Shown: positions 10,801 through 43,471 of the stretch, one piece after another
Layout: every line of letters begins with the position of its first letter
How positions within the stretch are numbered: the first letter of the stretch is position 1
From: Ruditapes philippinarum
Lineage: Eukaryota
Assembly: GCF_026571515.1 (NCBI RefSeq)
Contig: NW_026860156.1
Coordinates: 62,001 to 126,000, forward strand
Direction: 5' to 3'
DNA length: 64,000 nucleotides
Translations under genes and position numbers: made by a program
Notes under the pieces: generated by a model
Databases searched by the model: none
Seen by the model: only the letters and a program-made list of their open reading frames with translations
What the model was told of the DNA's origin: nothing

Positions 10801-12107
10801 GTAAGTACATTCATACTTCATGTGTTGTTATCTTCTACGAGGAAATCTGTTCTTATGATTCATCAGATATATATAACCATCTAAATGTTCCATTTTATAC
10901 ATTTTTTTTAACGTTCAAAAACTTTCTTGGAACATAGTTATGCATTACATTTTTTATGCGAAAATCTTTCATAATTTGTTATCAAAGAGAACTGTTTCAT
11001 GTGTTAAGATGAACTAAGTATTTAGATAACAAATAACAAATTTTAATGTGTTTTTATGTAGACATATTTACAAAATGTGGTACTGAGTTTTATCTCTGAT
11101 TGCATTCTGTCTTTTTGGAGGCTGACCTGTGGCACTTGTATAGTGTCAGTGCATTCAGCACCTCCATGTACCAAGCTGTTACCTGCTCTAGTGTTGTACA
11201 TTTTCTTGATACACCTTAACTTATAACATTACATAATTCCAAAGTTGGACAAATTTCATTTTCAACCAATGCATAGATCCCTGACCTGTCTAATTCTGAT
11301 TATCAGATTAGTGGATACAATTAGAATTTCATCGCAGCCAACATATATGTCAAGTCAATGTTTGTTGTCAAATATATTGTTATTCAAATAAATGGTCAGA
11401 GTAGGGATCTATCAATACATGAGAATTCAATATTTTCATATTTTTGGTATTTTCGGCATTTTCATTAAAAGGTTTCCTTGGAGAAGATTTTAATTAGTCA
11501 TTGTCATTTTCACCCATATTTTGTCTCTTCCACCTGGTACATAGTATATACTTGTTTGTCATTTTTTCACCCATATTCTTATACATATTACATTATACTG
11601 GTAGAATTTAGTTATATAGAATATCTTATCATTTTAAACACTTCAACAACATCTTTTCATAGGTTTGTTTCACAAATCTCTCTTCATTATCACATTACAA
11701 TGTCTATTCATGTCAAGGAAACATTTAAATTATTATTATTTCCCTTTTTTTTGCAATCAGTTTATATATTTCTTTAAAAAAGCAAGCAAAATCAAGAGCA
11801 GAGGATTTTGTTTGAATTTACTTACATGCATAAGTTTCTGATAATAATAAAGACTTGATCAATAGAATATAAATATTTTATGAGTAGCAACTTCAGTAAA
11901 AATGTTGTTTTAGTGTAGTTATTGTTAGAAGTCTGTAAGTCAGTCCAGTAAGATTTTGTAGAGAATTTTTTTTCTGTGTTTACTTGGCATTTCTGTGGAA
12001 GTGGTTGTTTTGAAGTGTGTGAGGTGAATTTCTTTAGAGTTTTCATTATATGATGTTGTATGTAATACCCTACATTTTACTGTTTGATTGTGATTTACCT
12101 TTGATTT

Positions 12108-12124
12108 GTTGTGTGTGTGTGTGT
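12108..12124. repeat. (TG)n microsatellite
   Basis: tgtgtgtgtgtgtgt run. Confidence 0.5.
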
Positions 12125-12363
12125 TACTTCCAATTCTTTATATAGTGTTTATATATAATGAAAGTTAGTATTTATTGTGACAGAGGGATTTGAGAAAATA
12201 ATTCAGATGTAGATCATTGGTGATTGGTAATTTGTTATTAAGCAGGTTGAATTAAAGTCCACATTATAAATTATGGTCGTTTTATTAAGGCTAATGGAGT
12301 TGATTAGACATGACAGGATATTTATCTGTAATACACCAATCAACTGTAATCTTGCCCTGCTGA

Positions 12364-12448
12364 CCACCCCCACTCCCATCCCAAACCACCACCACTCCCA
12401 TCCACACCATCCCCACTCCCATCCTCACCACCCCAAAACTCATCCCCA
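12364..12448. repeat. C/A-rich low-complexity tract (G-rich on the minus strand)
   Basis: ccacccccactcccatcccaaaccaccaccactcccatcc... Confidence 0.6.
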
Positions 12449-13914
12449 GCAGTACGGCAAATAACCAAATCTGTTACACTAGTCAAGGGTGTCACTGCAC
12501 TGCTGTGCAGTTTGGGTGGGTTTTGTCTTGCCATCAAAATTTTTAATTATTTGTCCAGTTGGCTCACAATGGCTGTTTATGTTAGTAGGTAGGGGTTTGA
12601 TAATTCAAAGTCCTCGTTACTCCCTGGAGATAAGGGATCAGGGATACAATTGAATGGTGTATTGCTATTTTCGCTTTTATGTGAGTTTTTTTTTATGACA
12701 ATCATTATTAGACCTATAGAGAAAGAATAAAAAATTAAATAATTTAAAAGCCTGTGTGCTTTAGGTTTATAAATTGACACAAATTTTGACATGATTTTAG
12801 AATACCACCTGTATAGCTGAAGTTTAATATTGACTATAAATTACAATATTATGTTTCATTTCTGGTGTCCCTTTTGTTTTAAATAATTAAATATTATAAC
12901 TTGATACTTTCATTTTGTTATCTGACACATATAGTATTACACTTATCACTTAAACTGAAAAAATGTGTATTTGTTTAAGCAGAGATTTATCATTTTATAA
13001 GTTCATTATTTAAGTAAAATTGATAGGTTAAAAATGGGACTTGTCTATTTTAGCCAAGGGATCCAGCTTTTTGGTAAATTTTATAGAAAATCCTTGCTTA
13101 TAGCAAATTATGGAGAAAATGTTTTCCCATAGGTACATATCAAATGCTAAATTTAAGCATTTGATAAGGATTTGCTGCTGTGGTGGGCATATGTAAGCCG
13201 TTGTTTCCTTGAGCAAGAAACTTTACATTTCATTGCTTTCCTGCATTGGATCGGAGAGTGTTTCAATAACTAAACTAAATGCTTTTGAACTCAACTTTGA
13301 TATGGACATACATTACCAGACATTATAATAAAGATATCACATTTTCTCGAGACATTATTTACAGCAATTATTTAATACTTCACAAGGGTAATTAATATTT
13401 CATGGTTTTTATATTGTAAGCTATAAACATACTAAACTGTTATAATATATTAACATATTTTTTCAAGTTCATTGCTCTCTAACAAGAGGGATTATTATAA
13501 TTAGTATACGATATAGCATGGATTAAGTTGTGACTTTGATTTTATAACATGGTATACAATGACTGACATGGTCGTGTGAGGTGACATTGTGAGGTATAAA
13601 CTCTATAATTATTGTCAATGTTGTCAGTTATTTGGCCAATACATTATGCAAATTTTATACTGTATGAAAAAAGTTTTCAATTTAAGAGATTTTTATATTA
13701 TACTTGTCTCAACAATCTGATTATAGTCTGGCAGTAATAAAGATAAAAGAAATTATTATGTTGTCAACAGAGCATAATGGTCCCCTAAGCTTTAAATTAT
13801 TATAAGATTATCTTTGACAAAAGTCAAGTGAATTATTCTAGCATCCTCCTCATTGGCACATGTTATGATGTGGAGAAGTTGACTCTCACTTGAGGAGAAT
13901 TACCAAAAAGGATC

Positions 13915-14172
13915 AGGGGTGCTTTTCACTCATGTACTTGTGTTATCATAACTCGTGTTTGAACGTTACTTTTTGCGTAAGCAGAACTTACATTTTATTT
14001 GCGTTTCACTAAACTTTCTTAGCTAAGCATTTGCATAGGTTTAAATGTAAAGTTACACTCACTTAGTTTAGTGAAACGCACCTAATATACATTTGCGTTT
14101 AGCGTAAGTCCAAATTTACTTAAAAAGTTTTTTACGCTACACTTACAGAATGTTAGTGAAACGCTCGCCAGG
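13915..14172. mobile_element. Degenerate palindromic MITE
   Basis: Terminal similarity gcttttcactca / ttagtgaaacgc and internal inverted pair gcgtttcactaaact / agtttagtgaaacgc; CpG-richer than flanks. Confidence 0.45.
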
Positions 14173-15425
14173 ACTGTAGTACTGGTACAACTTCAATGAA
14201 TACAGGTCCAGATTGTGAGCATGTTAAAGTGTCATAAGCTAAATATCGTAATGAATTATTTTTTTTTCAGCACATTTAGATAGAGGAATAAATTTCTATG
14301 CATTAGTATGACTGTTCTCTGAACAAGTAAATTGTCCTGTGACTGTAAAATCAACAGGGGTAGTAGTGAATGAACATTTAAAATTCTATAAAATTTGATG
14401 GGTTTGATGAACAAATGTATATCTATCAGTAGGTGCTCTGTTATTAGTGATTCTCAATTTGTTAAATTGCAAGTTATAAATTACTCTTCCTTTGTCCAAG
14501 GTACTTTGTTTTATGTATTCTAATGACCATTTCACCTAGAATTCAACTTTTAAAATTCAGTCTGTAATAATTATTCAGAAGATTTAGATTGGTTTTACTT
14601 CAATAACCTATCATTAGAGTGATAGTATACCACTATGTTTGAAAATAGAATAGAAACTTAAACAGTTTTGAAATTTACACACCTTTTCAGCAGTGCAAAT
14701 ACTAGAAAAGACTAAAATAATATGTTTATTTTGGCCATGATTTATTTACCAAAGATTTCTATTGATAAATGCAGAGTTGCATTAAATTAGAGAAAAAACA
14801 AACTCCAGGTGATCTAAATAGTTATAGAACATAGTATATTGATATTTTAATATCACATTTTACGATTAATTGAATTTTAATGAAAAGACTAAAAAGACTT
14901 GAAGTGGACATTTTGTACAAACTTTAGGTTATTTATATTGGGTATTAATTCTGTATTTACACCTTAGCGAGAGAATAAATTCGTAACAATTTAAATATAC
15001 GTATTAATTTTTCACACAATATTATCCACTACAAACGGGTAGTTATACAGTAAAGGTAGGGTAGTTATACAGTAAAGGTATCGTAAACTATGATTACTGA
15101 TTACTACACAAGATTAGAGCGTAAATTGGGCAGTTTTACGCTGTGGATCAAGTATATATGAAAGGGGGGTAATTGACGTGCGTGTGACAGGGTTGTTTTG
15201 AACGGGGGGGACCTTTATATTGATAATCTTCCTTTTATATACATGATACGGGTTATCCTAATCTATTGTGATTTAAAAGAACAGTGCATTTCTCTGAGAT
15301 TTATGGAATTAACATTTTATTGAAATGGTTTTACATTAGATTTGGATTAGGATTTGGCCTATTTTAAAACATCAGCATTTGAATATATACCTTTCATTTA
15401 TATATCTGCATGAAAATAAGGAAAT

Positions 15426-15520
15426 AAGATTTTTACCAAAAAATATGGATTTTACTCATAAAAATATGGATTTTATCCATAAAAATATGGATTTTGACCA
15501 TAAAAATATGGATTTTGACT
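15426..15520. repeat. About 21-bp minisatellite, 4 copies (aaaaatatggattttgaccat)
   Basis: Direct tandem copies visible. Confidence 0.8.
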
Positions 15521-16194
15521 AGACACGAAACTTTCAAGTATGATATTGTGTTTCCTTGAAACTGCATATAAAAGATACTGAAATTAAGTTGAATTTTTTG
15601 AAGAAAAGTGTCATATGTGCATTCTTGTGGGAAAATTTATTTTAAGGAATAAAAAGAAAACTTATCACAAATGAATGTCAGTGTATATATGGATAGTATA
15701 CACTGATTGATATATCTGTAAACGCTTTATTGTCACACTTTGTTGCTTTTCTTATATATGTTTAAAACTTTTATATACAAACTGTGCGACCATCATATAA
15801 ACCTTAAAATTTGCAAAGTGTTTTTTAGTGGGGGATGTATTAATTTTTCTACACCATGAAAAAAAATTTCACTTTATCAACATAATGGAAATAGATTTAT
15901 TAGCAAGATTTGATGAAATTTTTGTTTATTAAGCATTGAAAGTACATAAATATTAATGGAAAAAGTAGGTTAATTTACATTTTTAAATGAAAGCTCATCT
16001 AAATGGACTAGCGTGAAGGATGTTTTTAGCCTGAAAAGGATGTTGGAAAATGTGATAGAGTTATGTGTTCAAAGTGAAGAATTTGCATATTATTTCATAG
16101 AAAAAAAATAGGGGTTACTTTGATCAGCTGTGAATATTTGTAGAAAAAGGTTATAAAAAAGACGTCATGAGGTTTAAGATATTGATGTGTAACA

Positions 16195-16423
16195 ATGGTG
16201 CTGATTTTAACAATTCTGACGCTCATAGTGTCCTGGTTTTATCATAACTTTTACGATTATTTCACATTTTTCTGCGGAATGTATGTGACAATAAATATCG
16301 TCGACAAGGCGTGTGATTTGGCTGATCACATGACCAATGAGGTAGCAGATACAGAGGAAGTTTTCGAGGAATGTTACGAAGAATTGTACCCAACTGCCCC
16401 ACTTGCAAAACCTGAAATATTTG
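16195..16423 (+). CDS. Putative alternative first coding exon A: hydrophobic signal/anchor N-terminus then acidic linker
   Basis: aacaATGG start; 76 codons + 1 nt; donor G|gtaagt; phase 1 matches the acceptor at 43472. Confidence 0.6.
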
Positions 16424-17509
16424 GTAAGTTACTTTTTGACATGGAAAAAAAAATATCCAGCAGTAATATTGTTTAACGGTTAGTTTAATTCATATGAAAA
16501 TTTGACTCTGTTTAATATGAAAATTTGACAAGGCTCAGTGGGCTGCATCATATATTAGCTATTTGTCTTTTATCTGTTCATATTACATAAAGAAGGTACA
16601 AATTTGATCTTGTATGTTCATAAGACCTTTAATGTTTTTGTTGTAATCTCAAAAAATGTGTATTTAAGGTTTATAGACCTGCTTGTGTCTCAGTTTGGAG
16701 TCAGTGGTGCATATTGCTGTAAATGTTACTGTTTGATATTAATCAACATTTCAAATGCCTTTAATAATATCCTCTACTACCTAAGTCTAAATGTTAATAT
16801 TAGTGATTACTTGCAAAAGCAATAGGGTAGTATTTGCTACACTGATTTTGTATTACCTGCAATATGACTATTCTAAGGGAGACAACTATTATTGTCTTCA
16901 TTTAGTACTCTCGTAGTTCTCTCTCTTATTTAATAATAAATGCATAATTGCCTGTCATCCCTTTAAACTAGAAGCCAGTAGCAGTTAGTGTTAATGAGAC
17001 CTGATTGGGAAACTCATTATCATTGAAGTGGACACACATATTTCTTGGTTCATTTGGAATTTTTTCTTTGATTGCCTCTTTGTTTTGAGCTGTCTTAATC
17101 TATTTAACAGTTGGCAAAGTTTGGTAACAATATAAGTGTGACCTCCAGAAAATCTTGTGGAATTCTTCTAAGCTTTTTACTCAGAATAACTTCTGGTGTC
17201 TTATTTCAAAACAATTATTTACACTGCTGAAAGGTGGCATATTGAAAGATGAAAAACTATATTTTAAGCACATGTAATGATGTGTTTAACATTAAATAGA
17301 TATGTAAAAGCAAGTTTTCAACCCTTTAAAACACTTATAAATGTTAATTACTGTATTCACTGCACTGGGAACTGTACTGTCTTAAGATACATAACCCTAG
17401 TATATTTTCCCCTTAACACCCTATGTATGTATATACACTTGCAAACTCCTACACATCATATTTATAGGTCTTTGACCAAAATCTCTAACTTAAACAAGAA
17501 TTGAAAAAT

Positions 17510-18390
17510 GTGGAGCAAAACTGGGACTTTTAATGTAAGAGCTACATGGCATTGATGGAAGGGACCTTCAGTGTAAGAGCTAAATTGCATTGGTGAAATA
17601 ATTAGCAAACCTGAGACCTTCAATATAAGGACTAAATGGCATTGGTGGAATAAGGTTCAATGTAAGACCTAAATGGCATTTGTGGAATAAGGAGCAAACC
17701 TGGGGCCTTCAATATAAGAACTAAATGGCATTGGTGGAATAAGGAGCAAACCTGGGACCTTCAATATAAGAGCTAAATGGCATTGGTGACATAAGGTTCA
17801 ATATAAGAGCTAAATGGCATTGTTGTAATAAGAAGCAAACTCGGGACCTTCAATAATAAGAGCTATTATTGGCATTGGTGGAATAAGGAGCAAACCTGAA
17901 CCTTCAATATAGAGACTAAATGGCATTGGTGGAATAAGAAGCAAACCGCGGATCGACTTCAATATAAGAGCTATAGTGGCATTGCGTGAATAAGGAGCAA
18001 ACCTGAGACCTTCAATATAAGAGCTATATGGCATGGTGGAATTAAGGAAGCAAACCTGAGCAACTCTCAATATAAGCAGCTAAATGGCAATGTTGGAATA
18101 AGAAGCCATAACTCGGGACCTTCATATAAGAGCTTTATATGGCATTGGTGAATAAGGAGCAAACCTGAGACCTTCAATATAAGAGCTATAATGGCATTGG
18201 TGGAATAAGGAGCAAACCTGAGACCTTCAATATAAGAGCTATATGGCATTGGTGGAATAAGGAGCAAACCTGAGACCTTCAATATAAGAGCTATATGGCA
18301 TTGGTGGAATAAGGAGCAAACCTGAGACCTTCAATATAAGAGCTAAATGGCATTAGTGGAATAAGGAGCAAACCTGAGATCTTCAACTTA
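17510..18390. repeat. 52-bp minisatellite, about 17 copies including truncated units
   Basis: Unit aataaggagcaaacctgagaccttcaatataagagctatatggcattggtgg; starts at 18256, 18308, 18360. Confidence 0.95.
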
Positions 18391-21300
18391 AGTGTTAAAT
18401 TAGTTGAATTTGGAGCAAGCCTGGAACCTTATGATTAATGTCAAAAGTTTAAACTTTTTATGCCCACATAAATACAGTTTGTTTTGATTTTAAGTTCAGA
18501 ACCAATTCCATAAACATGTATAATGGTAGAACTTTTATTAATACTTACAAGTAAGTTATTGTTCAAAATGTGAAAATGTATATAAAGTTATTAGAAATAA
18601 TGATAACTGCAAACATTTCAATATGTTTATTGGCTTGGTTGATCATGTTTATATTATTTCACTGTTTATTTTCTTTGTTCCTGCTTGGATGTCTGGAAAA
18701 TATATTTTAATCCTTTTATTACTGGTAACCATAGGGTTCAGGGCAGGAAGTAATTAAAGACTCAGCTCATCTGTAAATATAACCGTTATAATTACTTCAA
18801 CCAATCTATCATCTCCTGTAAAAAAGCTTTCCTAAATACATCTTTTTACTTGTTTTTAATTGTTTCCATGTGCGAAATGTTAAAACACATGTGGATCCAG
18901 TAATTTATTGAAGCAGGAAGAAAATCCTTGTTGTTAATACCTTCACTTTGGGTTCTGAGATTCATCAAATGTTTTGGGAAGTTTTTTTTAATGGCTTGCT
19001 TTTTTTGGGATTTAAGATATGGTTGATGATGATTGATTAATAATTAGGGAATAGTGGATAAAGCACTAGATTGTTGAGAAGTTTTCCTTGGTATGTGTGC
19101 AGTCTATTGTTGTATTATATTGAAGTAGTCCTTTTTACTATTAAAGCTTTTTTTGTCTAAATCTATAAAGTAGTTATTTGTTTTTCATAATGATATGCAT
19201 TGCATATATGTTGTTGGAAGAAATCTACAGGTACATGCTTTGCTCAAGTCTGCAACTAATTAAATGTCTAAAGATTTTCTTCAAAAATGCAAAATGGGAA
19301 TTAAGAAGTGGATCATTAAATTAGATTTGAGACTGCTGTAAGGAAAATAATTCTAGCGTAATTCCTAGTACATGCATTTGGTGCAGAATTTTCTGTTTCG
19401 TTGATGATATACCAAATGGTAGATATAAAGTACACAGCTTCTTTGCTAGGTTTTCAAAGTCCAACTAACTATGTTAAGGACATAATATTATAGTTCTTTG
19501 ATGCATGATTTAGTTTTAAGCACACAAAAAGTTAAGTTAATTAAAATTTTAATATAGTCAATTACCAATTGACCACACAAAAAGTTATCAGCTTAGTCAA
19601 TCACCCAATCCTCACCTCAAAGCAGCAATAGTCACAATATGGTCAACGTTATTGGGCTGCAGTACGGTAAGTGATGTCCTCAGTCCTCGGTCATGAACTA
19701 TATTATGCCCATGAATACATAATGGAGAATTCAAAAGTAACACAAATTTTAATCTTTTGCTAATATCAGATAACTTCACTTTGCACTTCCTTGTATCATA
19801 CCAAAGTGTGCCAAAACATTTTTTTCTCATAAGAAAACATACAAAAATAAGGTTATAAGATAACCCATGGTGCTGAAAATTGGCATCTTGTCATTTCATT
19901 GAGGCATTTTAAACTATAGACCCAGCAAGCCTGCATCAGTGACATTAACTTTGTATGATAACAAACAGTTTGCTAACAGCACTAATTTCATCTTATCAGC
20001 GTTATTTTATCTCTAAACTCTCTCCTATCATGTTTTTACCTGACAGTTCTCTGTAGGAATTTATTGCGAAAACACTTAAAAAAGAACACAAAATTGTAAT
20101 ACAATGAGATAAGAATAAATCAGAAAACAAAGAAAAACAATTCCACAAGGATTAACATCTGGGAATACATTGGCATAATTTGTTTCTGTCTTGAAATATA
20201 CATGAAAATTAATCTATTCTAAAACAAATGATTTTTAACTGAATATCATTAACATTTCTTATTTAAGTTAATTTCAGTAGTAATGATATTATATTTCGAC
20301 AGTTATTTCAGTGCATAATTAAAGGTTCCAGCACTGTGATACATTTCATTTTATAAAAAATACCTGTTAAAATGTTAAACCACTGAAGCAATAATTAAAG
20401 TATAAATTGTACATAGTTTTACTACTGGAAATAGAATTATAACGGAAATGCAGCGATTGCATATTCAAACTTGTCTAACAGCTGGTATATATTGCCCTGC
20501 AAACGTTACATAAAAAACTGGCTCCATTTTCATTTCAAAAATGAAAAACAGGTTTTCTGCAATCACGTTTTCCGCACACTTGTATGTTAACAAGTTCTTC
20601 AATTTCATTCACATCAACTTCATGTATGTCTGTTGTTTGGTTTGATATCATAGTCTTTGAAATCCACCTATAGTCTTTCAAATTTTTACCTTCACCTTTA
20701 TCTTTGAAATTCAACTGTAACTTGTCTACAAATGTAATTACTCTTCATTGAAATTGATATTTTTGAATTGTGAATGCTATTTGAAAGTGCTAGTTATTTT
20801 GTGTTAAAGAAAGTTATTAATAGAAAATTAAAGTTTGTTAATATTTGCACTTTTTAAAGATCGCTACTTTAATTAAACTTCCCATGCATGCATTGAAACA
20901 CATGCATGAAGTTAGAGGAGGAAGTAATTTGGTTAACACAGACAGGTTTCTAGTTACCTTCCTACATTCATATAACCTGCTTTATCAGCATGCTGTCCAC
21001 AACTTTATTATAAACCTTTCCTGCATCCATCATTTTCTCAGATGATGGATACCCCTCCATGCTCTTATTTTCGTATATGTGCAGGGTGGTGTTTAAAATA
21101 TATATACAGTACTGTACAACAAGATTTTTTGGTTGATTAAAATTTTGCCAGCAGCTAGTAACTTGAATTTTAAGTTTTGATATTTCTTTTTTTAAATGTT
21201 AAAGACCTGGTAAGGTAACAACTGTTAAGAAAAAAAAAACAAATATAAAGATGTTGTGAGTAAGAAATTCAAGTATCAATTTCACCTAGACTGTGATAAT

Positions 21301-24479: not shown

Positions 24480-24981
24480 ATGGAGCGACTAGATAACAAG
24501 TACAGAAGTCCTAGGCATGGGTTTCATAGGGAGGTTCGTTTTGACAGAATAAGGGATGTTAGAATTGATAGATTCAATGCTGGAATAGACAGATATGTAG
24601 ATTACAGTGATATAGGAGAATATCAGAGGCCAGAGAGAAATGGAGACCTTCAAAGACCTGATAGAAATGGAGATTTGAGGAACAGTAGAAATGGACGTAT
24701 ATCACGGAATGACAGTGATGGAGATCTACCTAGAAATGATAGAAGGGTAAACCTAAAAACTGATTTGAATGGTGAAATCAGGATAGAAGACATTGATGAT
24801 ATAAGAGTTGAGAGAACTGGTGATGTACGAACCTGTACAATGCCCGCAGCATTATCACAAGAAGCTCCACCTGTTATTAGAAGGCGGGACAAAAACAAGA
24901 AAGATAACTCTGGCAACAGAAGGAGCCGCCCAGCCTCCTGGTTTGTGTCACACTTCAGTTTCGATAAACTTTTCAATAGAG
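24480..24981 (+). CDS. Putative alternative first coding exon B: Arg/Asp/Asn-rich 167-aa N-terminus
   Basis: 211-aa ORF with aaaaATGG start; donor G|gtaaga at 24982; phase 1; possible 5'UTR acceptor ttttcttcag at 24246. Confidence 0.8.
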
Positions 24982-27054
24982 GTAAGAAACAAAGAAAAAA
25001 ACATTTCTTAACTGCCATCAATCTCAATTTACCTTATAATATCTGTAAGTCCTTGAAATTTGAGTTAAACTTTGTATATTGTTGGTCTGGTTTAAGTCCC
25101 GGTGCAAAGCTATAAATTTACTGCAATATGAGTTGAGCGCGTTTTTTTTATTCCCTGAAGGTTCTTTTATGAACTTGTTGTCTATTTCTGTTTAATTAAG
25201 TAATTAATTTGATGGGTCTTCTTGTATCAGGAACGTTTTTGATATATGAATAAAGACATAACACTTTGATGTGATCATAGATTGTTTTAATTGGTATGGT
25301 TCTGGTATAATGAACAGCTAGGCCTCTATGTAGTGATATTAGTATTATTGTTTACTATAAGGATAATTCAGATTATGATTTCTTATAATTCTCCTTTGTT
25401 CTCTATCTTTCTGTAGTTGTTAACTAAGCATATAAAAAGTTCTATGAATGGGAGCAGATTGTATTTTGGTTGTTCACATTTCCAATGCTTTGAATTATTT
25501 TGCACATGAATCAGCAACTTGTTGGCTTAGAGTAGGGAGGAGAACTTACTTTTACATTTTATTTTGTAATGTTATTAGTGTAGTTTCTGAAATTAAGCTC
25601 AACAATTAAATTGCAAAAGTTTCTTTTCTTGTCATGTTCACTTTCCTCTGCCATGACAACGAAATTAATCTTTTTCATATTAAATATGATACATAAAGAA
25701 TGGTAAATTTGCTCTTTGAATGAAATTATTTGTAATTATTTTGACATTAGTTTGTTTTATCTTTATGAAATTTGACTAGACAGAATGACATAATGCTTAA
25801 ATTATTCTTTGTCAAAATAATGCCTCTATGTTGCTTTTGTTTTGCATAATTTTGTGCAGGATAAATAACATAGAACTATTTTAATATAATTATGCAGTGC
25901 AGGAATTTCCATACAAAATGTGAAACAAGTGGGAATACTTAATACAAAATGATTCATCAGCCTGATTATTCTGCTTCATTTAAGTAGCTTATCAGTAACT
26001 TGCTTTTGCACTGCATATAAAATTCATTTAGGCTATTTTTAGAAGTTAATTATTGGTATTCAAGATAACAGGATATAATTTGATTGATAGATTATCAGGG
26101 GAGAGCAGCCATGTTAGATTAGAGTATACAGAATGTGTTTCATCTTCAACATGTTTATTACAAACTTGACATAAACAGTCAATGACCATTGCCATAAAAT
26201 GGATGTTTTGTGGGGGTTTCTGGTTTAATACGAAGCTTTTAATGCATCCTTTTACTGTTTGAAGTTTCTTACAAGCAATTAGTTTTATAAACATGATAAA
26301 ATAATATTATGAGCTGAGAATTTATGCCTTCTGGAACTCCTTGGAAGTTGCGAAAGATGTCCAAGTAACACTTATGTGGCCTGTTTAAGTTGTTTTTTTA
26401 CAAGAACTTGGAATAGTTACTCTGGTTTTTCACAAGTGATCACAAAGACTTGCAGCACCTGAGCAAACCATTAAATAACAAAACAACTATTTTAGTCTTG
26501 TATTGACCACCATTTAGAATCAGCTGCCTCATCTAGCTGGCAGTAAAAAAATGTTAGTTAGCAAAGAATTGGATCTTTGAAGTTATGAATTTTTTTTTGA
26601 AATATGAAATCTGTTAAGAAAAACAATAGTGTTCAAAATATTGAGAAGATGGTCTTTCTTGACTGATTGTCTATGAAAACACTAAATGGGAATTATTGTG
26701 ATGGTTTCAATTTTGAGGTGGTCTTTAACTAAGGTTTGACTATATTGTGCAATATTAATATGCAAAAATTGGCATATCTCGACTTACAAAGTATTATGAT
26801 TTTTTTTGTAAGACAAGGAGTATCAGCAGCCTTATTTCTACAACATTGAAGTATGCTGCTTTCACTTTTAGGCTGTGCATATCAGTTTTATTAGGGAAGC
26901 AAAAATATAGCTTCAAACAGCTGATTTTACCATGGAACATATAGAAACCAGCTGACTTTTTCAGAGAGGTTACCTCATAAATTTGTCATTAATATAGACT
27001 CTTATAAGAGCATTTTTCTCTTTTTCATGTCAGGTAGACAAGAGAAAGATGTTT

Positions 27055-28817: not shown

Positions 28818-30059
28818 TTTGTGTGCTGGGAAAAATATTCATTTTCCAAGTACCAGTAGCTATAAGCATATTCCTTTACAAACATGAAAGTAGATTTATT
28901 GTTACTGGTAAGCCGGTAAGCCGACTTATCATTCAAGGTAAGGTAACCTAACTATCAAAGGTAGTCCAACTATGCTGAAGAAATGTCTATATTGTTATGA
29001 TTAATTAATTGGTCTTAACATTTATTCTTTGTAAATTGTTGGTATCTATATGTTAATCAGAATGTTCATATTTCATAACTGGTGTTCGGATTTCAAAACT
29101 AAGAGATTGTGATGGGAATGCAATAGAAATAGCATACTAGTGGTTACTATAAAATTATGGCAGATAATGTATACCCAACTGACTCAGACGATGTTTTGAA
29201 GAAAATGTCCGCTTCATAGTTTGTCTAACATTATACACCTCATATAATTATATGGACTCAAAAGTGAGAAACCACTGTACACGGTTTTACTTGCTCCTTT
29301 AAAATCAATGGACTGCATATATATGTATGTATTACCAGCTCATATATTTCACATTTAAATATGAATATTATATAATGCAGATTGTAATGCATCAAGAATT
29401 GATGGCTTTTTCATCACTCATCATTATATAACAATCATCTGATATTATCAAGTTTTGTTTTTGATATCATTTTACAGATCACCTTCAATAGCCTTTTGAA
29501 CTTTATGATGAAAAGTTACATGATCTGCTACATTATTCTTTAGTTTCATATATGCAAGCACAATCTAACCCAGGGATCTGAATTCTCTGTAACTGTAAAG
29601 AAAAGTAAAACATTTTTGATACATGTTAACCGCAACATTTACTGTTTTTAGATCCATAGAAGTTAGAATATCTGCAGGTTTTGTTCCTTTTGATTACCTA
29701 ACCAGATGATTTTCCCAGGTATGAATCAGGTTGACTCATTGTAATATAGATTTTACTATACTGTGGTTACCTGGTTATTTTTAGGAGTAATTGTTGTGGA
29801 GCAGTTTGAAGGTTGAAGTCCTTGATATTGATAGGGATTTGGCAGACTCCTGTATTATAGATGCAGACAGTTGATATATGAATATACTTTTAGTTTATGC
29901 TCAATGATAGATATAGATTTAGAAAGTGATTGTTTTAGATTTGTTGATAATCTTTTAAGATTGCGGTTCATTATATAAGAAGACTGAAGGACTGAAATAG
30001 ATGATAAATCTATTAGAACATGAAGCAGACTGTTTTATGTCAGCAGATCTGTACAATAT

Positions 30060-34114: not shown

Positions 34115-34918
34115 TTTTTAGCTCGACTATTCGCAGAATAATGGAGCTAATGCAGTCACCCATTTGTCGGCGTCCCTGTGGTTAAGTTTTTGCTTGCAAG
34201 CTGGTATCTCCATAACTACTGAAGGGAATGGATTGAAACTTCACACACTTGTTCTCTGTGATTATCTTACATGATTGGCACAAGTCCCATAACTCTGATT
34301 TGCTTTTTCACATAATTATGCCCCTTTTCGACTCAGAAAGTCTTGGTTAAGTTTTTTACGTGCAAGCTGGTATCTCCATAACTACTGAAGGGAATGGATT
34401 GAAACTTCACACACTTGTTCTCTGTGATTATCTAACATGATTGGCAGAAGTCCCATAACTCTGATTTGCTGTTTTGCATAATTATGTCCCTTTTTCGACT
34501 TAGAAATTCTTGGTTAAGTTTTTGCGTGCAAGCTGGTATCACCATAACTACTGAAGGGAATGGATTGAAACTTCACACACTTGTTCTCTGTGATTATCTA
34601 ACATGATTGGCACAAGACCCATAACTCTGATTTGCTTTTGTGCATAATTATGCCCCTTTTTCGACTTAGAAATTCTTGGTTAAGCAAATATCTCCATAAC
34701 TACTTAAGTGTTTGTGCCTCAAATTTTTTTAACAATTTTATGCATTTTATAATAATAAAGCAGTGATTAACTGGATAAAACATCTTAATAACAAGCCTTT
34801 GTACCTTTTTGGACAATTTTATGTATTCATAATGGTAAGCATTATTATACTCAATGAAACAGACTTGTGACAACTTTTTTGAATAGTCGAGCTTTACTGT
34901 CCTCCGACAGCTCTTGTT
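34115..34918 (+). mobile_element. Non-autonomous Helentron/pearl-like element with about 3 units of about 166 bp
   Basis: Subterminal inverted repeat agctcgactattc/gaatagtcgagct; 3' hairpin ctgtc-ctcc-gacag, cttgtt end; gctggtatc at 34200, 34366, 34531. Confidence 0.85.
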
Positions 34919-37840
34919 CATTATCATTTGACTTTTGTTAAAAGGTATAACATATCTGTTGTGCACATGAACATGCAGATACATGCAGCTACTAATTATT
35001 ATAATATAAAGTTCAGTTCTAAGCATGTGATTTTATAAATTAGCAGAAAGACGATGTTATATAGTAGACCTCACATGAAGAATAACTGGTATGGTTAAAC
35101 AGAAGCTGTACTGTAAGACAATGGGGGGAAGCCTTGAATTTTGAATTTTAGAGCTTTATAAAAGCATTGGCTAGACATGTGTGATCATGTGGCCAATTGT
35201 TGATTGTAATGCATTACAGATTACATTTCACAACCAGACATTACAGACACATTAAGGTATACTGGTTCCCCTCTGGTTTCTATCACATCCTGGTACCGGT
35301 GTGGATATATTCCCAGGTGTCAGCTAAATAGAAATAAAATATTGGGAGAATTGTAGACACCAGGCATCTAATTTATACCTGATTACAAATTAATTAAGTA
35401 AACAAGCTTTAGCTTTTCTGTTTTCAGACTCTATACATATTGTTGAACTTTGATGAACTTCTGCGATTTCTGATAGAAGAGTCTGTATAAGTTATTTATA
35501 ATACATAATGTTTGTATTCATAAGTATTTAGACAACTTATATCTCTGAATTGGCCAAACTTACTATCAATATTTTTGGATAGATTTTTCTTTGATGAATA
35601 TTTTTTAATTAACCTGATAGCTGTTCAAATCATACTCGCAGCAGACAAGTTACTAATAATTTTCCTTTTGTGCATAAGTCAGACTTGATAAAATTGTTTC
35701 CAAATGGCTTCATGAAATAAAAGAAATTCACTTGGAATTAAAAAGTAAAATGACTACATTAGTTAGAATGGATGTTATACATTGTTTACTTTGTATACCT
35801 TTTTGGCACAATTATTTTAAAACTATATCAATGAATTTGTAATATCAGAAATACGAGAATGTACTCCATTGTTTTGATCAATTGTTTCTAATGGTTTTAA
35901 CATTATTTGTATGTGTCATAAAGTTAAAGAAACAGTACAAAAACATTATAAACAATGGTTTCTTTGTTTTTACTGTTTAGAGTAAACAATATAGTAAACA
36001 AATCACATGGTCACAACTTTATTATAAGTGTTAATTCATTAAGGGTAACTCAATAGTTCTTAAACTTGGTGGGTAAATTGTACAGGGTGTGTGTAAAATT
36101 ACACAGCCAGTATTTTATAATTAAAAAAAAAATGTAAAGAAAAAATATAATTAAATCATTCTTATGTGGCTTGGAGATATATGACATAAGTTTTCCTTGC
36201 TTATGATACAGATAAAAAAAAGTGCTTTGTAAAAAAAAAAAAATTGAACAATTGTAATTTAAAAGTTTCAACATTGGACAGATAGGAAAGTACAAAAAAA
36301 AATTACATGGTCATGTCAGCTGACATCATAAGTTAACATCAATTTAATTTACTTTATTTCAAGTTATTTTTAGTTGTTGAAATATCATGTTAATTTCATG
36401 ATTTCATTGTAACAACTTCAAAGGATTACAAGTGGATCAACTTGCAGTGTACATGAAATTTAGAGTGTACACATAACTTCTGCACACAATCTGTACCTCT
36501 TTAATATGGAGAAATTTGATATTTATTACAAGACGTACAAATTTGAACAAGTGTTTAAAATTTGAAATATTTTGGTTCCCAACCATTTATAAATGACCCT
36601 TTGATAAACCTAATCAGATTTTGACATTAAATTTTGAAGTCACAATCCCGTGAAAAAAAATCAAAGTGTTAAAGTTGAATTATGTGATATATATCCGATT
36701 AAAGTTAGATGACTTTGAATTAAGGATATGATTTGATATGATTAGGAATCAAGTGTTAAATTGTATTGTGTTTAAATTTAAGAGCAAAGAATTATGTTAA
36801 TTAGTTATTGGAAGTCATACAGGTATTTAATATGTTGAGATTGTTTGATGTCCGAAGAAAAAATGTGTGTTAAATATTTGAGATTGTGTTGATATCATGT
36901 GTAATTCTTTATGATGATTGTGGAGACGTTTTATTGAGGATCCTCTGTGCATTTCAGGAATGATGTCAATATGGCAAAAGAAATTGTTTTGACAAATTTT
37001 AAAACGAATATTAATTCATACTTTTGTTAATAATGTAACTCAAGAATTTTGACGATAAATAAATGATAAATTTATTAACAGAATTACAGTGTTGAGAAAA
37101 AGAATCACCAAAAATGAAAATTTTTTATTTGTCATAATTGAAAATTTAGTGTTGAAAAGAACTCGTATTTTGCATAATATTGTGAATTGAAATTCAAAAA
37201 GTCATGAATTATGTCCACGGGGACTTAAGAATTAAGTCAGGTGTCCGTGAGTTCTTGTTTATGAATAAAACATGAAACGACCTTATACATTGAAGTACTT
37301 AAATCTGATATTTACGTGTGAATTGATAAAACGTTCAATCGTATTTGTACTATCAATGTAATTGAATATTTTTGAAGAGTTCAGCAATAGGATATTTGAT
37401 TGACCAAGTTTTTGTCCCTGTGTGTTGACAGAAAATACACTGATAAGATAATTCATTGTCATACTTTGTAAGATTATCAGAAAAAAACTGATTTTTTTTT
37501 ACGTTTTTTTTCAAATAAACTGTATACTTAAGTTTTATTTAATCATGCTTCATTTAAAAGAGGACAAAGCTTTTGATGTCTAGATAACTTTTTATTCAGT
37601 GCAGTTTAAAAAATTTTCAGAATAATTGTTTTCATTGTTTGGAAATTTTTTTTCATTATTGACTGCTTCAAACTTGAAGGACTTGGAATAACCATGCGGT
37701 GATTTTTCTAATTTTGATTTTATGCTTTTTTATGGTGAAAAAAATATTGTTATATTAATGATGATAATCCAAAAGTACAAAGGAGTACTGGTATGTGTGA
37801 AGTTTAAAGGGAGATAATTCAATTAAGTTTGAAGAAAGAA

Positions 37841-37988
37841 ATGGGAAATTCTTGGATAGGAAATTTCTCTATGGATCGAATCCGAGGGAAAGTTCCGAGA
37901 GTTGAGGTTGTTCTTCGTTCCTGTAAAGCAGGAATCCCAATAGAAGGGAGGAAAGAGTATGTGATAACAAGACACAGTAACTGTTATG
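37841..37988 (+). CDS. Putative alternative first coding exon C: MGNSWIGNFSMDRIRGKVPRVEVVLRSCKAGIPIEGRKEYVITRHSNCY
   Basis: agaaATGG start; 49 codons + 1 nt; donor G|gtaagg; phase 1; GC-richer than its flanks. Confidence 0.55.
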
Positions 37989-39550
37989 GTAAGGATGGTT
38001 TAAATTTACCAATTTGTCCATTTAATTAATTACATTTGTATTTCTTAATGCTAGGACAACCAATATACCAATATGATATAAAATCGGTTTTAACCCTATA
38101 TCGTCTATATTGGACTTAAATGGACTTTTCTAGCTTCTATTTTTAGAATTTTTCATTATCAGTAATGGGTATATCAAGATAAATTTATTTAGTTGGCAAG
38201 TCACTGGTAAAGAGCCTTGGGTCAGACTGCAGGGAGGTACAGGCTGGCCCGGCTCGTATACTGGTAGTAAATGTTTTTAACTTTCAGTTCATTAGCACTG
38301 TAAGGTTTAAACAATCCAGGCTACAAGTATTCCTATGATTATTTTCTATATATATTTAAAAAAGGATTGGTTATGATCATTATAATATAATAATAATATT
38401 AATGGCCTTTAATTTTTCTGGTTTTCTGTATTTTCAACACTGGAACAATGAAAGTTTCAATTGAATTGAGTTGATACCAAGTTGTGATTTTCTCATTTAA
38501 ATTTCTTTGTGTTCCTGTGGTTCTAAATCATGCTTCTGAAATGGTGTCAGGTTAGTAGGGACATCCAAGCACCGAGTGTTTCAGCTTAATTGTGTGTTGT
38601 GGTTTTTTTGTTTAAATAGACTTGTTTCTATTTGCTTTGATTTCCCTATAAAATGGGTTGTATATTTACAGAAGATATATTAACCTTTTGAAAAGCGATC
38701 GATCCTCAATTATTGATCTGTTTGTAATCTACTTTTCTTTATAGTTAGATTTTAAACAGTTGTAAGTTGAGAGGAAAAGTTTAGATTCAAAGGGACTGAT
38801 AGCATTATAGAAAAGAAATCTAAAATACTGGATAGCCAATGAACTATCTGTGGTTTCTTCATACTTTAGATTTTTAGCTCATGTCCAATTCATGACTAAG
38901 TACTAAGTACTGGTCATATTCTATATCTTCCGTATATGTATGCAGTCTGCAGATTTTGACTGAAGGAAAAAACAAGATTTTAAAAAAAAAGCCAATGTAT
39001 TTGATTGAATTCATTAAACATGTAAAATTGTCAATTGATTTCAATTTGTAGTTTTGGTTCTTAAATCAAATAGGCGATTTAATGCAAGCTCCTAATATCT
39101 AGGAGTATATTTGTTAACACCTGCAACAAAATGTGCAAGATGCATATAGATTTGCTGGGAATCATTCTGATTTATTATAAAACATCTTTCAGAGCCACAT
39201 AAATCCAATGAGAAAGTAGAAAATAATTTGCAATCTTAGTGCAGTAACAAACAAACTCCTATTAAATTGTCACTTGCTACTGCAAGGACTAGAAACTGCA
39301 ATGAGGCCTAAGAACTGCAAGTCTGTCCAGTCAGTAATACCAGGCTCTCTACTGTTTACTGTTTTATATCATTTCAAATTTTGAAAGTTTATATATGGGA
39401 CTGAGTTCCAAAGTCACAGGAAAAATATTAAAATTCTTTTACTCAAATTCAGCAGAATAAATGTTAAAGAGTCTCTATAATAAGCGAATTATGTGGACTT
39501 AATTAGTAGCATTATAAGACAGTAATTATAATCATTTCTGCTGTTAACCA

Positions 39551-40130
39551 TTTTATGCCATGTTTGATTATTGTCCATCCATCTGTTTGTCCGCTTTTTG
39601 TCAAGTCCATAGCAGATTTTGAAATAATTTTACATAAATGTGTTAAGCATAATAGGATTGTATATGGTTTGTAGGTCAAAGGTCAAGGTCACACTTACTC
39701 TTCAAAGAAATTTTTAATAAAAGTGCTATAATGGTTGTGTCAGGTCAACAATTCTGTCATTCCAAGATTCATTTTAAGTAATTTGACATAAATGTGTTGA
39801 CATTATAATGACAGTTAGTGGCACTGAAGAATCAGTTCTTAAGTCATGATGTGGACTTTTCTCAAATAAACATGGATGATAATGCCTGGTCAACAATTCC
39901 GTTATTTCTTGATAGATTTAAAAATAACTTTATCATTATTGAGTTAGACATGATAATTTTGTTGCATGTCCAAGAATCGAGTGTCCAGATCATATGTCGA
40001 CCTCAGACTTGTATGCCAAAGTCATTGTATGATTGTGAATAGAATTATGGTTGTGTCCGGTCTTAGTCAAGGACTGTCATTCATTGAAATAATTATGTAC
40101 ACATTTAGCTGATGTGTCTTACAGGTCTTG
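39551..40130 (+). mobile_element. Old, degenerate Helentron/pearl-like relic
   Basis: ttttatgcc start, gtccatccatctgtttgtcc tract, aaggtcaaggtcac motif and decayed repeat units; ends uncertain. Confidence 0.4.
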
Positions 40131-42504
40131 GTTCTTCTTGCTATTTTATTAATATTAGGGTTTTCTTTTAAAGATGAAAATGAGGTCTATAGAAAAAAGA
40201 TGACATGTTAAGCTTTATGTTTTTGTCAATCAAATAATTACCTAACATATTTGTTAGTTTCTATATACATTTTCACCAAGAAATTGTAGGTGGCAGTTGG
40301 TGTGTAAGCTCACCTACCAGGGTTCCACTACCTCCTTAATCACCTGCTCCTCGCTGATAGAACAAATCTCAGTTTTTTCAGATTTTCATTTTTTTTTCTC
40401 TCAAGATTTTTTTTCCAGTGATAATCAGATGCCTAATTTAATGGGTATTTTTCTATCATCTTGCACTGTGCTTAATTGAAGTTCCAGGTGGGGAACACAG
40501 TTGCCATTATTATCACAGTAAACAGGAAGATTTGGTTAGAATGGTAAAAATCTAATGTATTTAGCAGTTTCTAAGACATGCTTAAAATATACCTCATAGA
40601 TAACACTTCATAAATTATCATGTTAAAGTTCACCAAACAAAGTTTATTTCACTAAATAAAGTGTTTTGCAATTCACTTAAATATATTATAATGAATGTGA
40701 TTTGAAAAGAGACACAGTGCTATAATGGTTGAGTAGAAAAGATGTCTACCTCTAATTAAACCTAGAGTCATCATGGGTTTGAGACAAGGTCACAACCATA
40801 TCTCCTTAATAAAGGACACAAAATAGTGCTTATTTCCACAAGTCAGACCTGATCACAAATAAAGGCAGACTTGACTGTGATAGATTCAAATCACAGGAGT
40901 TTTGACATATATTGTATGTATCAGTAATTGTCATAAAAGTTGAACTTTCTCTCAAATGCCCCATCTCTATAATATATAAATAAAACACTATTGAGATGCT
41001 GTAGATTCTTTGGTAAAAATTTATGAACTTTTGAGTTCCTGTATTCGAGGTAGCTTCAAGCTTACTTTTTACGGCTGAAATACATATATATTTAAGCTTA
41101 AATGATTCTGAATTAAATAGTGAGAGAAACAACTGTTCTGTTGTGAAGTTCGATTTTTTTTCTCCAGATTTATTTATCATGGAATTCTCAAGTAATGGCT
41201 ATAATAGGCAAGTGGGTGGGAGTTACACCCATAATTAATTGAAATGTATGTTAGCTTGTCCTGATAATGTAATGTTATGTTGGCTAACCTTCCTGCAGGT
41301 TGCTGAGAAATAACATTTATTTGACACACAGCATGTAAAAACTGCAGTGTTTGAGAGTGAGCAGAACTGCAATGATGTATGATAGTGCTTTCTTAATGTA
41401 GACAAAGAGAATATTGACATTGCAGCAAAGGAAATTCTTTTTAGTTCCTGAAATATTGTTACTTTAATGAATGATATTGTTTTTGTTATTTTAACAACTG
41501 TGTGCATGTTGATCTTTCAACCACACTAAGTGACATACTAATGTTACATTAAATTTTCCTTTGTGATCTTATATCAAATTTATGAAACATTTGCATTCTA
41601 TTAGAAGGTATATAATTCCATACAAGTCTCAGGTGACAACAGATTTTCAACATTGCATTTTGAGAAAAATATGTTGTTGTTACCTCCATCTTCAAATATT
41701 ACTACAATTAAGCTTGTCATTTTCTCATTAAACACTGAAGGTATTGTTTTGAAAACTAATCAAGTCCCACAACTTTGGCATTGATTTTGGCTGAATTAAT
41801 TACCCCTTTGTTATCTTTCTGTATGAACTGGGCTATACAATTAGATTTAATTGATAATGGTTGCTTCTGATTATGAAGTAACTTAAAGGAGATGATCATG
41901 TTGTATTTCAAAAATTGAGTCCATTTTAATCCCATCATGTCTGGTATAAACATTGCACAGTTACCAGTGATTCATTGAGTCCAGGCTGTTTACTAAAGAT
42001 AACTTGAGCAATAAAGATCCATGGTAAATAAACTTCATAAAGTATGATAAAATGAGAGTCATTACCACATGATATTGCTTGTTAGAGGAGTCAATCTCCA
42101 TGTTTAATAGGCTCACTGAATGGGCTTACTGTACTTAACTCACTGAAAGAAGATTTTGTCATTTCTTTTTTGTTTGTATCTCCATTGTACAATGCCATAA
42201 TATCAAATGGTGTTAACATTATATTTCAGTACTACTAGTACTGGGATTTTGATATTGACCATGTCCTCTATGTTCAGAGCGTTTGAAATTTGTAGCTATT
42301 ATTTAGGCATATACTCATTGACTTGTTATAACTGTCTTAAATTTGTAATATTAATACTCTTGGCTTATAGCTGGCACAGCCTCACAAGATGGTAATGAAA
42401 AATTACTGCATACAAGTATTTGATGCAAAATTTATTTTATTCAAGTATTTGTTTGTTTATTAATGTTAAATTGTTTATTCAATTGTTTCTTCATTTAAAC
42501 TTTT

Positions 42505-42588
42505 TTCATTTATTCATTCATTCATTCATTTATTTATTTGTTCGTTCATTCATTCAGTCACAGTTTTCATTCATTCATTCATTCATTC
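42505..42588. repeat. (TTCA)n microsatellite, interrupted
   Basis: ttcattcattcattcatt runs. Confidence 0.8.
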
Positions 42589-43471
42589 CAAAAATAGGCC
42601 AGTAAGTAAAAAGTGAGAAATTGTTATAGATTCTTTTTGAAATTAACATTTGTTTTGATATGTATGTGATAATGTATGTATCATTCACTATTGATGTAAA
42701 TAAAATGAATTATTAATGAAACAGTAATGCAGAAAACCTACCTATCTTCTGCAGCAGTCTCTCATTATAGTATTCAAGTCCTCAATTAGATAATGAAATT
42801 TTCCCTTGATATTGAATGTTTTATACTTATATTTTAGCTTAAGTTCATTATATTTCTATGTTTATGGTTCATGTAGTTGTTGACTGAGCAGTAGCACCAC
42901 AGTAGACCTATGCCAGCATGGTATAGATCGAGGCCAACCTCCATCTCTTTGTGTGAATTGGCCATACTCTATAATGGGTCAAGTGCTATAAGTTATTCAT
43001 GATATCCATATTGTAAAATAGTTTCAAATTCTGTGCAGACAGTCAGCTTGGTGATGGATATGAAGGCATTTTTTGTAGATTTTTCTTTTCAGGCACTACT
43101 ATACTTGTAAACTTTCTTGACACAAATTGCTGTTTTATCATGAAATTTCATAATAATAATTTTATACTTTCCATTTCAAGATTTTATGATGCACTTTATT
43201 CTTCACATAAAACACCATTTTATTGCATAAATTTAAATGTTGCAAGAAATCTAACTTAAATTAGGAAATAAAAATGTAATATAACTTATATACGTAGACT
43301 TTTATCAGGTTTTATTATGTGTTTTTTTTGTAAACCTGTGTTTTTATTACATCTATCATGATTTATTTAAACAAAAATCCACTTATTAAGGGAGGCAAGA
43401 AAGTAATATTAATATATCATCAATTAAGATAAAGCATTGTAATTATATGTTCATCATTATTTTTGCTTCAG

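What the first reader, a model, noticed from the sequence alone, without database searches (positions are those of the whole stretch)
10801..43471. Array of alternative first exons gives one coiled coil several different N-termini
Seen: inside a 32.7-kb intron are three ATG-initiated exons (16195, 24480, 37841). Each has a purine at -3 and G at +4, and each ends G|gtaag in phase 1, matching the common acceptor at 43472. The long upstream isoform also arrives in phase 1. Established: human MTUS1 uses alternative promoters to make ATIP1, ATIP3 and ATIP4 with different N-termini on a shared coiled coil. Inference: an ancient or convergent variable-first-exon system that routes the same scaffold to microtubules, membranes or phosphatase complexes. 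Combined with the duplicated exon pair it would allow at least 8 isoforms.
Basis: partly seen in the sequence, partly recalled or inferred. Interest (0 to 1): 0.8.

Follow-up and report, generated by a model that had tools for sequence, protein, structure and literature searches.

The report
Alternative first exons, clam coiled-coil gene
A clam gene for a coiled-coil, probably microtubule-associated, protein carries three separate start-codon exons inside the long intron before its shared part; two are real exons conserved in other species and the third is probable, so the gene most likely makes several proteins with different heads, as its human relative MTUS1 is known to do.

Summary
ORFs A (16195-16423), B (24480-24981) and C (37841-37988) each start at ATG with a purine at -3 and G at +4. 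Each ends G|GTAAG in phase 1, the same phase as the upstream donor (10800) and the acceptor at 43472.

- **Chance:** these are the only such ORFs in the 32.7-kb intron. Dinucleotide shuffles never gave three (0 of 300).
- **Copy number:** all three are single-copy in the genome and unrelated to each other.
- **Exon B:** strongly conserved. Its last 39 residues are almost invariant in eight unnamed relatives, with 23 synonymous and 2 non-synonymous codon changes against one metagenome copy. Similarity stops exactly at the G|GT donor.
- **Exon A:** has a hydrophobic N-terminus and is conserved from its first Met to the donor in at least two other species.
- **Exon C:** no homologue found, but the search was weak. 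Its codon usage is coding-like (p about 0.01), and about five RNA reads in one run carry three SNPs, all synonymous.
- **Not shown:** any junction to 43472, or separate promoters. The single read-laying run gave only 2-3x depth.
- **Not testable here:** MTUS-family membership.

Alternative first exons of one gene is the best reading. It is known in kind from vertebrate MTUS1, so interest is moderate. The same scan already noted exon A and this gene's duplicated exon pair on this same window.

The parts
10624..10800 (+). Probable last exon specific to the long isoform, with donor T|gtaagt after 10800 in phase 1. The exon start at 10624 is inferred from the acceptor ctctgtatag|.
   Evidence: open frame 10581-10934, donor read directly. 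Not tested by RNA.
10801..43471 (+). 32.7-kb intron between the long-isoform exons and the first shared exon. It contains exons A, B and C plus repeats and a satellite.
   Evidence: No junction reads were obtained.
16195..16423 (+). Exon A: alternative first coding exon of 76 codons + 1 base. It has a hydrophobic N-terminus (residues 1-36, 16195-16302), then an acidic tract with an invariant YPTAPL.
   Evidence: single copy. P0008 is 72% identical from the first Met, P0011 is 75% identical, and similarity ends at FG|K, which is G|GTAAG. Kyte-Doolittle 1.76 over the first 19 residues.
24480..24981 (+). Exon B: alternative first coding exon of 167 codons + 1 base. Its variable N-terminal part is rich in R, D and N.
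   Evidence: single copy. P0001 is 80% identical, P0002 and P0003 are 57-58% identical, and five more share the core.
24867..24981 (+). Deeply conserved core of exon B, PPVIRRRDKNKKDNSGNRRSRPASWFVSHFSFDKLFNRG. It is a basic cluster followed by an aromatic stretch, ends at the donor, and contains an invariant RxRxxS site (RSRPAS).
   Evidence: 30 invariant columns across 9 sequences; against L006, 30 nucleotide differences in 117 nt, 25 at third positions, with 23 synonymous and 2 non-synonymous codons. The AGAG|GT donor is conserved and the alignment collapses after it.
37841..37988 (+). Exon C: probable third alternative first coding exon of 49 codons + 1 base, MGNSWIGNF...
   Evidence: single copy; the codon-usage score is above 98.9% of intronic open frames; about 5 RNA reads in run X19 only, with 3 SNPs that are all synonymous. 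No homologue was found.
43472..43692 (+). First shared exon. It has a phase-1 acceptor tttttgcttcag| and donor gat|gtaagt, and encodes the start of the coiled-coil part.
   Evidence: RNA depth of 2.4-2.5 in X19 and X20, against almost none in the 200 bases upstream; single copy.
46399..46924 (+). Next shared coding region: two tandem 241-nt exon copies (46399-46639 and 46684-46924). This is the 'duplicated exon pair' of the finding.
Evidence: Not re-examined here.
49343..49501 (+). Further shared coiled-coil exon. Later exons lie at about 63871-63999 and beyond the window on L009 (424-552, 1268-1366, 1720-2760).

Best explanation
The window holds most of the clam's single gene for a long protein with a C-terminal coiled coil.

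The 32.7-kb intron in front of the first shared exon contains three unrelated, single-copy, ATG-initiated coding exons. Each most likely has its own upstream transcription start and is spliced from its phase-1 G|GTAAG donor to the common phase-1 acceptor at 43472. That skips everything upstream and yields short isoforms with the same coiled-coil body and different heads:
- A gives a hydrophobic membrane anchor plus an acidic YPTAPL tract.
- B gives a basic/aromatic 39-residue module with an RxRxxS site.
- C gives a short head of unknown role.
- The long isoform from the far-upstream exons carries the basic, SxIP-containing region.

Shown here: the exons exist as described, beyond chance. A and B are conserved coding sequence with conserved start regions and donor positions. 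C has coding-like codon use, a few RNA reads and only synonymous SNPs.

Inferred: the splice to 43472, independent promoters, and what each head does.
For: 1. Exact anatomy and phase match of all four donors with one acceptor.
2. These are the only such ORFs in the intron. There are none in other phases or on the minus strand with the Kozak rule, and 0 of 300 dinucleotide shuffles reach three.
3. All three are single-copy in the 1.4-Gb genome, so they are not transposon ORFs.
4. Exon B: eight homologous ORFs (P0001-P0007, P0013, P0014) plus three metagenome loci. Similarity ends at ...FDKLF[NH]RG, the G|GT donor. 23 synonymous against 2 non-synonymous codon changes versus L006, and 15 against 1 versus L008. 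In P0001-P0003 homology begins at the first Met.
5. L006-L008 share nothing else with the 64-kb window, as expected for an isolated exon between non-coding flanks.
6. Exon A: P0008 is 72% identical over all 76 residues, including the first Met and the hydrophobic segment. P0011 is 75% identical. Similarity ends at FG|K.
7. In-frame stops sit directly upstream of the ATGs of A and B with no AG between.
8. Exon C: codon-usage score 0.133 in frame against -0.17 and -0.04 out of frame, above 98.9% of 178 intronic open frames.
9. Exon C in run X19: depth of about 3, similar to the shared exon (2.5). It is nearly absent in X20, which does cover the shared exon. Its 3 SNPs are all third-position synonymous.
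10. Precedent: MTUS1 has the same architecture, and ATIP4 has a TM domain (PMC8147298).
Against: - No read or contig joining any of the three donors to 43472 was seen.
- The search of 1.84 billion representatives with exon B found only short genomic ORFs that read into the intron. It found no full-length protein with this head on a coiled coil. Isoforms may be hidden inside 50% clusters.
- Exon C has no detected homologue.
- Transcription starts are unknown.
- No Pfam family matches any exon, so MTUS-family membership could not be tested.
Confidence: 0.7

Rival explanations
1. Exons A and/or B are first exons of one or more independent small genes nested in the intron. They would splice to undetected downstream exons inside the intron rather than to 43472.
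For: No junction to 43472 was observed. No full-length protein with the exon-B head on a coiled coil was found. Nested genes in long introns are common (general knowledge).
Against: Same strand and same phase as the host gene's own donor and acceptor. No other long open frame with coding character lies between them on the + strand. Metagenome contigs of relatives show no second conserved block within 0.5-1.5 kb downstream of exon B. The vertebrate family member has the same layout.
Confidence: 0.1
2. Only A and B are real. Exon C is a chance open frame, and the few RNA reads on it are pre-mRNA or another transcript.
For: No homologue in the word search or in metagenome contigs. One such Kozak+ORF+donor candidate arises by chance in 11% of shuffles. 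Only about 5 reads in one of four runs, with repeats nearby also drawing reads.
Against: Codon-usage score in the top 1.1% of intronic open frames, and best in the claimed frame. Three of three SNPs are synonymous third positions. Depth on C in X19 equals that on the shared exon, while most intron bins are near zero. The homology searches could see only ORFs of 27-86 aa, so the blank is weak.
Confidence: 0.25
3. The exons are used, but not from their own promoters. Transcripts start at the gene's upstream promoter, skip the long-isoform coding exons and splice a non-coding leader onto A, B or C. That would be alternative splicing rather than alternative promoters.
For: Nothing here locates a transcription start. 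No acceptor or leader was excluded for C, where several AG dinucleotides lie between the upstream stop and the ATG.
Against: For A and B there is no AG between the in-frame stop and the ATG, and the sequence just upstream is not a polypyrimidine tract. This route would require skipping all upstream coding exons. The vertebrate precedent uses separate promoters.
Confidence: 0.1

Closest known systems
Human/rodent MTUS1 (ATIP1, ATIP3a/b, ATIP4; mouse ATBP50/135/60)
   Same: One gene with a long N-terminal form and short forms made from alternative first exons and promoters. All share a C-terminal coiled-coil region, and one short form (ATIP4) has a transmembrane segment (PMC8147298). The clam layout matches: long upstream exons, then isoform-specific ATG exons inside the intron before the first coiled-coil exon, one of them hydrophobic.
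   Different: Homology of clam exons A, B and C to the vertebrate isoform-specific exons was not tested. Clam junctions and promoters are unproven. The clam gene has no detectable paralogue in its genome, whereas vertebrates have three family genes.
CCDC69, the short vertebrate paralogue of MTUS1/MTUS2
   Same: A short head on an MTUS-type coiled coil. Its N-terminus starts Met-Gly, is myristoylated and anchors the protein to the membrane (PMC11621681). Clam exon C also starts Met-Gly and would give a short head on the shared coiled coil.
   Different: Exon C fails the PROSITE myristoylation pattern, with Ile at position 6. CCDC69 is a separate gene and is reported to have no invertebrate homologue.
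Variable-first-exon arrays such as clustered protocadherins and UGT1A (from general knowledge)
   Same: Several first exons, each presumably with its own promoter, spliced to one set of constant exons.
   Different: In those arrays the variable exons are tandem paralogues of each other. Here A, B and C share no similarity, so this is ordinary alternative-promoter use rather than a duplicated array.

Membership tests
Alternative-first-exon gene of the MTUS1/ATIP type (architecture) | Two or more ATG-initiated exons upstream of one common acceptor, all in a compatible phase | tested here: met
   three such exons plus the long-form donor, all phase 1, far beyond shuffle expectation.
Alternative-first-exon gene of the MTUS1/ATIP type (architecture) | The isoform-specific exons are real coding sequence under selection | tested here: met
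   Met for A and B. For C there is only codon usage and synonymous SNPs.
Alternative-first-exon gene of the MTUS1/ATIP type (architecture) | mRNAs join each first exon to the common exon | tested here: inconclusive
   depth of 2-3x on exon C and the shared exon, with no joint reaching the 3-read listing threshold. A and B lay outside the 6-kb stretch that could be laid.
Alternative-first-exon gene of the MTUS1/ATIP type (architecture) | A separate promoter or transcription start for each first exon | not testable with these tools
   No CAGE or 5'-end data. The promoter scanner is for bacterial sigma-70 sites only.
MTUS protein family (MTUS1, MTUS2/TIP150, CCDC69) | C-terminal coiled-coil region homologous to the shared ATIP/TIP150/CCDC69 region | not testable with these tools
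No Pfam model matches any exon. That is a lead, not a test.
N-myristoylated proteins (for exon C) | Met-Gly start followed by the pattern G-{EDRKHPFYW}-x(2)-[STAGCN]-{P} | tested here: not met
   MGNSWIG has Ile at the position that should be small.
   REVRF is present and conserved in the window and P0001-P0003. The whole N-terminal part that carries it is absent from the more distant homologues.

The most novel reading that the evidence does not exclude
The clam's single MTUS-type gene would preserve an ancestral multi-promoter layout: a membrane-anchor head (A, like ATIP4), a Met-Gly short head (C, like CCDC69) and a deeply conserved basic/aromatic head (B). The vertebrate MTUS1 isoform set and the separate CCDC69 gene would then be partitioned remnants of one old variable-head system. 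The 39-residue core of exon B would be an uncharacterised, ancient targeting or regulatory module. It resembles a polybasic, Phe/Ser-rich membrane- or calmodulin-binding switch with an RxRxxS phosphosite.
Probability: 0.15. Interest if true: 0.6.

Novelty: new member of a known kind. Interest (0 to 1): 0.35.

Why it matters
If the junctions are confirmed, the 'one coiled-coil body, several heads' design of the MTUS family predates vertebrates, and a single-copy invertebrate gene becomes available to study it. The most useful concrete product is exon B's 39-residue core. It is kept almost unchanged while synonymous sites are near saturation, matches no known domain, and is a clean candidate for a localisation or regulatory module. 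Otherwise this is ordinary alternative-promoter usage. Automated genome annotation probably already captures it for related clams.

Tried and rejected
- **RNA reads.** Four raw-read RNA runs were laid on 37800-43790, chosen to span exon C and the acceptor. Depth was too low to list any joint or any loose end at 43472 or 37988, and both caps are now used. Most laid reads were partial matches to repeats (38115-38255, 39235-39268, 39666-39697).
- **Big HMMER search with exon B.** It returned only short genomic ORFs, plus repeat-rich giants (P0012, P0015-P0017) that match the low-complexity R/N/G/D part. Those were rejected as unrelated.
- **Cluster members of the hits.** All read into the intron, and none is spliced.
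- **Exon C.** Blank in the word search and in the metagenome scan.
- **Pfam on all exons and PDB profiles of A and B.** Nothing meaningful came up. The melan-A, alkB and TehB hits are above E = 0.1 and were rejected.
- **Rfam and tRNA scans.** Nothing in the intron.
- **Transposon origin of the exons** was rejected because all three are single-copy.
- **Paralogous array** was rejected because the three peptides share no similarity.
- **Joined model.** Every exon was searched on its own.
Full report
**1. What was claimed and what is in the sequence**

Each was said to have a Kozak-like context, to end G|gtaag in phase 1, and to match a common acceptor at 43472. Reading the sequence confirms every detail.

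- Exon A is 16195-16423, 229 nt. It encodes MVLILTILTLIVSWFYHNFY...PEIF plus one base.
- Exon B is 24480-24981, 502 nt, 167 codons plus one base.
- Exon C is 37841-37988, 148 nt. It encodes MGNSWIGNF...SNCY plus one base.
- The upstream donor after 10800 (T|gtaagt) is also phase 1.
- The acceptor is tttttgcttcag|AT.
- The split codon becomes GAT for A, B and C and TAT for the long form.
- A and B have an in-frame stop three and two codons upstream of the ATG, with no AG between. In this frame they can only be entered at the ATG.
- The window has no N.

**2. Is it more than chance?**

I scanned the intron exhaustively for ATG-ORFs of at least 120 nt that end at GT[AG]AG.

- On the + strand in phase 1, only these three loci appear. 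B has a second possible donor at 25044.
- With the purine(-3)/G(+4) rule, there is nothing in the other two phases and nothing on the minus strand.
- In 300 dinucleotide-preserving shuffles the mean number of such donors was 0.117. P(>=1) was 0.11 and P(>=3) was 0.

The triple is therefore not a chance pattern, although a single candidate on its own could be.

**3. Are they real exons?**

All three peptides are single-copy in the 1.4-Gb assembly, so they are not transposon ORFs. They share no similarity with each other or with the long-form exons.

*Exon B.* The word search found seven ORFs and the all-against-all HMMER search added two more.

- P0001 is 80% identical. P0002 and P0003 are 57-58% identical. 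P0004 to P0007, P0013 and P0014 share only the last 45 or so residues.
- All are short ORFs from genomic contigs. In every one, similarity stops at ...FDKLF[NH]RG and unrelated read-through follows. The Gly is the codon made by G|GT.
- Three marine-metagenome contigs (L006-L008) give the DNA. The donor AGAG|GT is kept and the alignment collapses right after it.
- Over the 117 nt of the core, window against L006 shows 30 differences. 25 are at third positions and none at second positions, giving 23 synonymous and 2 non-synonymous codon changes. Against L008 the count is 15 and 1. That is strong purifying selection over a deep divergence.
- Nothing else in these contigs matches anything in the 64-kb window. 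This is what an isolated exon between non-coding flanks should look like.
- In P0001-P0003, homology starts at the first Met (MD[KR].R[ST]PR...).
- In the distant group the exon is shorter and starts M[AD]R[NR].DY[IV]RT just before the core.

*Exon A.*

- P0008 is 72% identical over all 76 residues, including the first Met and the hydrophobic 36 residues.
- P0011 is 75% identical over the part that was called.
- P0009 and P0010 are near-identical copies, probably the same species.
- Similarity ends at PE[ILV]FG|K, again G|GTAAG.
- The first 19 residues average 1.76 on the Kyte-Doolittle scale.

*Exon C.*

- No homologue was found in the word search, which could only see ORFs of 27-86 aa. None was found in JGI metagenome contigs either. 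Both are weak blanks.
- I trained a codon-usage score on the gene's other exons. Exon C scores 0.133 in the claimed frame, against -0.17 and -0.04 in the other frames. That is above 98.9% of 178 intronic open frames of at least 45 codons.
- In RNA run X19 the exon has a mean depth of about 3 (5-6 reads). This is similar to the shared exon in the same run (2.5).
- In X20 exon C is almost uncovered, although the shared exon is covered.
- The three SNPs seen in those reads (37912, 37921, 37966) are all third-position and synonymous.

I take C as probable, about three in four.

**4. Are they joined to 43472?**

This is the step that is not shown.

- Only one read-laying run of at most 6 kb was allowed. 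I spent it on 37800-43790, to span exon C and the acceptor and to catch loose ends from A and B at 43472.
- The gene is too weakly expressed in the sampled 1.1-1.9 Gb per run. No joint reached the three-read threshold, and the listed loose ends are all at repeats.
- Coverage does begin at about the acceptor. In X20 and X22 there is none in 43200-43399, with depths of 2.4 and 0.75 in 43400-43599.
- The HMMER search found no full-length protein with the exon-B head. Cluster members were all unspliced genomic ORFs.

The case for the join therefore rests on four points:

- A, B and C lie on the same strand as the host gene.
- Their phase is identical to the host gene's own donor and acceptor.
- They sit in the intron just before the first shared exon, with no other coding-like partner exon in that intron.
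- Vertebrate MTUS1 has the same layout.

**5. What the gene is**

- Downstream shared exons lie at 43472-43692, the tandem pair 46399-46639/46684-46924, 49343-49501, about 63871-63999, and three more on L009 beyond the window. All are rich in E, K, L, Q and R.
- No Pfam family matches any of them.
From memory, the C-terminal exon peptide resembles the conserved end of MTUS1/MTUS2/CCDC69. Neither is a test made here.
- The first shared exon and the C-terminal exon are both single-copy in the genome, so the clam seems to have one family gene.

**6. Comparison with the known**

ATIP1, ATIP3 and ATIP4 arise from alternative splicing and different promoters of MTUS1 and share 396 C-terminal residues. 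ATIP4 has a canonical transmembrane domain and is confined to the CNS.
- PMC11621681 adds that CCDC69 is a short paralogue. Its Met-Gly N-terminus is myristoylated and anchors it to the membrane. The paper states that CCDC69 has no invertebrate homologue.
- Clam head A parallels ATIP4. Head C recalls CCDC69 only superficially, because it fails the standard myristoylation pattern.
- Head B has no parallel that I could test.
That motif is conserved only among the closest relatives and lies outside the deep core.
- Unlike protocadherin or UGT1A arrays, the three heads are not paralogues of each other.

**7. Verdict**

Two conserved alternative first coding exons are firmly established and a third is probable. 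Their use as alternative heads of one coiled-coil protein is the best explanation (0.7), but the junctions, promoters and family homology remain to be shown.
- The kind of system is well known, so novelty is 'new member of a known kind' and interest is moderate (0.35).
- The most interesting residue is the almost invariant 39-residue core of exon B.

Noticed in passing
window 24867-24981: The last 39 residues of exon B form a basic cluster, then an RSRPAS site (RxRxxS), then an aromatic SWFVSHFSFDKLF stretch. They are nearly invariant in nine sequences from at least four lineages while synonymous sites are near saturation. No Pfam or PDB match was found. The composition recalls polybasic, Phe/Ser-rich membrane- or calmodulin-binding switch segments, which is my inference only.
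   Followed up: partly
window 16387-16404 (exon A residues 65-70): YPTAPL is invariant in all exon-A homologues. It fits both the P[TS]AP and the YPx(n)L short motifs known from ESCRT-binding late domains, and could equally be chance.
   Followed up: no
window 43447-43471: An ATG at 43447 inside the intron is in frame with the shared exon straight through the acceptor (MFIIIFAS-DQNRNK...). A transcript starting just upstream of the shared exon, or retaining the end of the intron, would also have an open start.
   Followed up: no
window 38115-38255, 39235-39268, 39666-39697: Short intronic segments attract many RNA reads with unmatched ends on both sides in all four runs. At 39666-39697 the segment is tandem AGGTCA-like units (ggtcaaaggtcaaggtca). 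These are repeat copies expressed elsewhere, not exons of this gene.
   Followed up: partly
window 61303-61374 (-): Rfam tRNA match (42 bits) that ARAGORN does not call. It is probably a tRNA-derived repeat or a degenerate tRNA gene in a downstream intron.
   Followed up: no
window 24600-24760 (exon B residues 40-95): The N-terminal part of exon B is made of loose RNGD/RPER-like repeats. Their number differs between close relatives (insertions in P0002 and P0003) and they attract spurious hits to giant repeat proteins (P0012 and others).
   Followed up: partly
L009 424-2760 (genome contig C8643:126424-128760): The last exons of the gene lie just beyond the window. The final exon is a 347-residue open frame whose start continues the coiled coil and whose remainder is Ser/Pro-rich and probably disordered.
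   Followed up: partly
   Followed up: no
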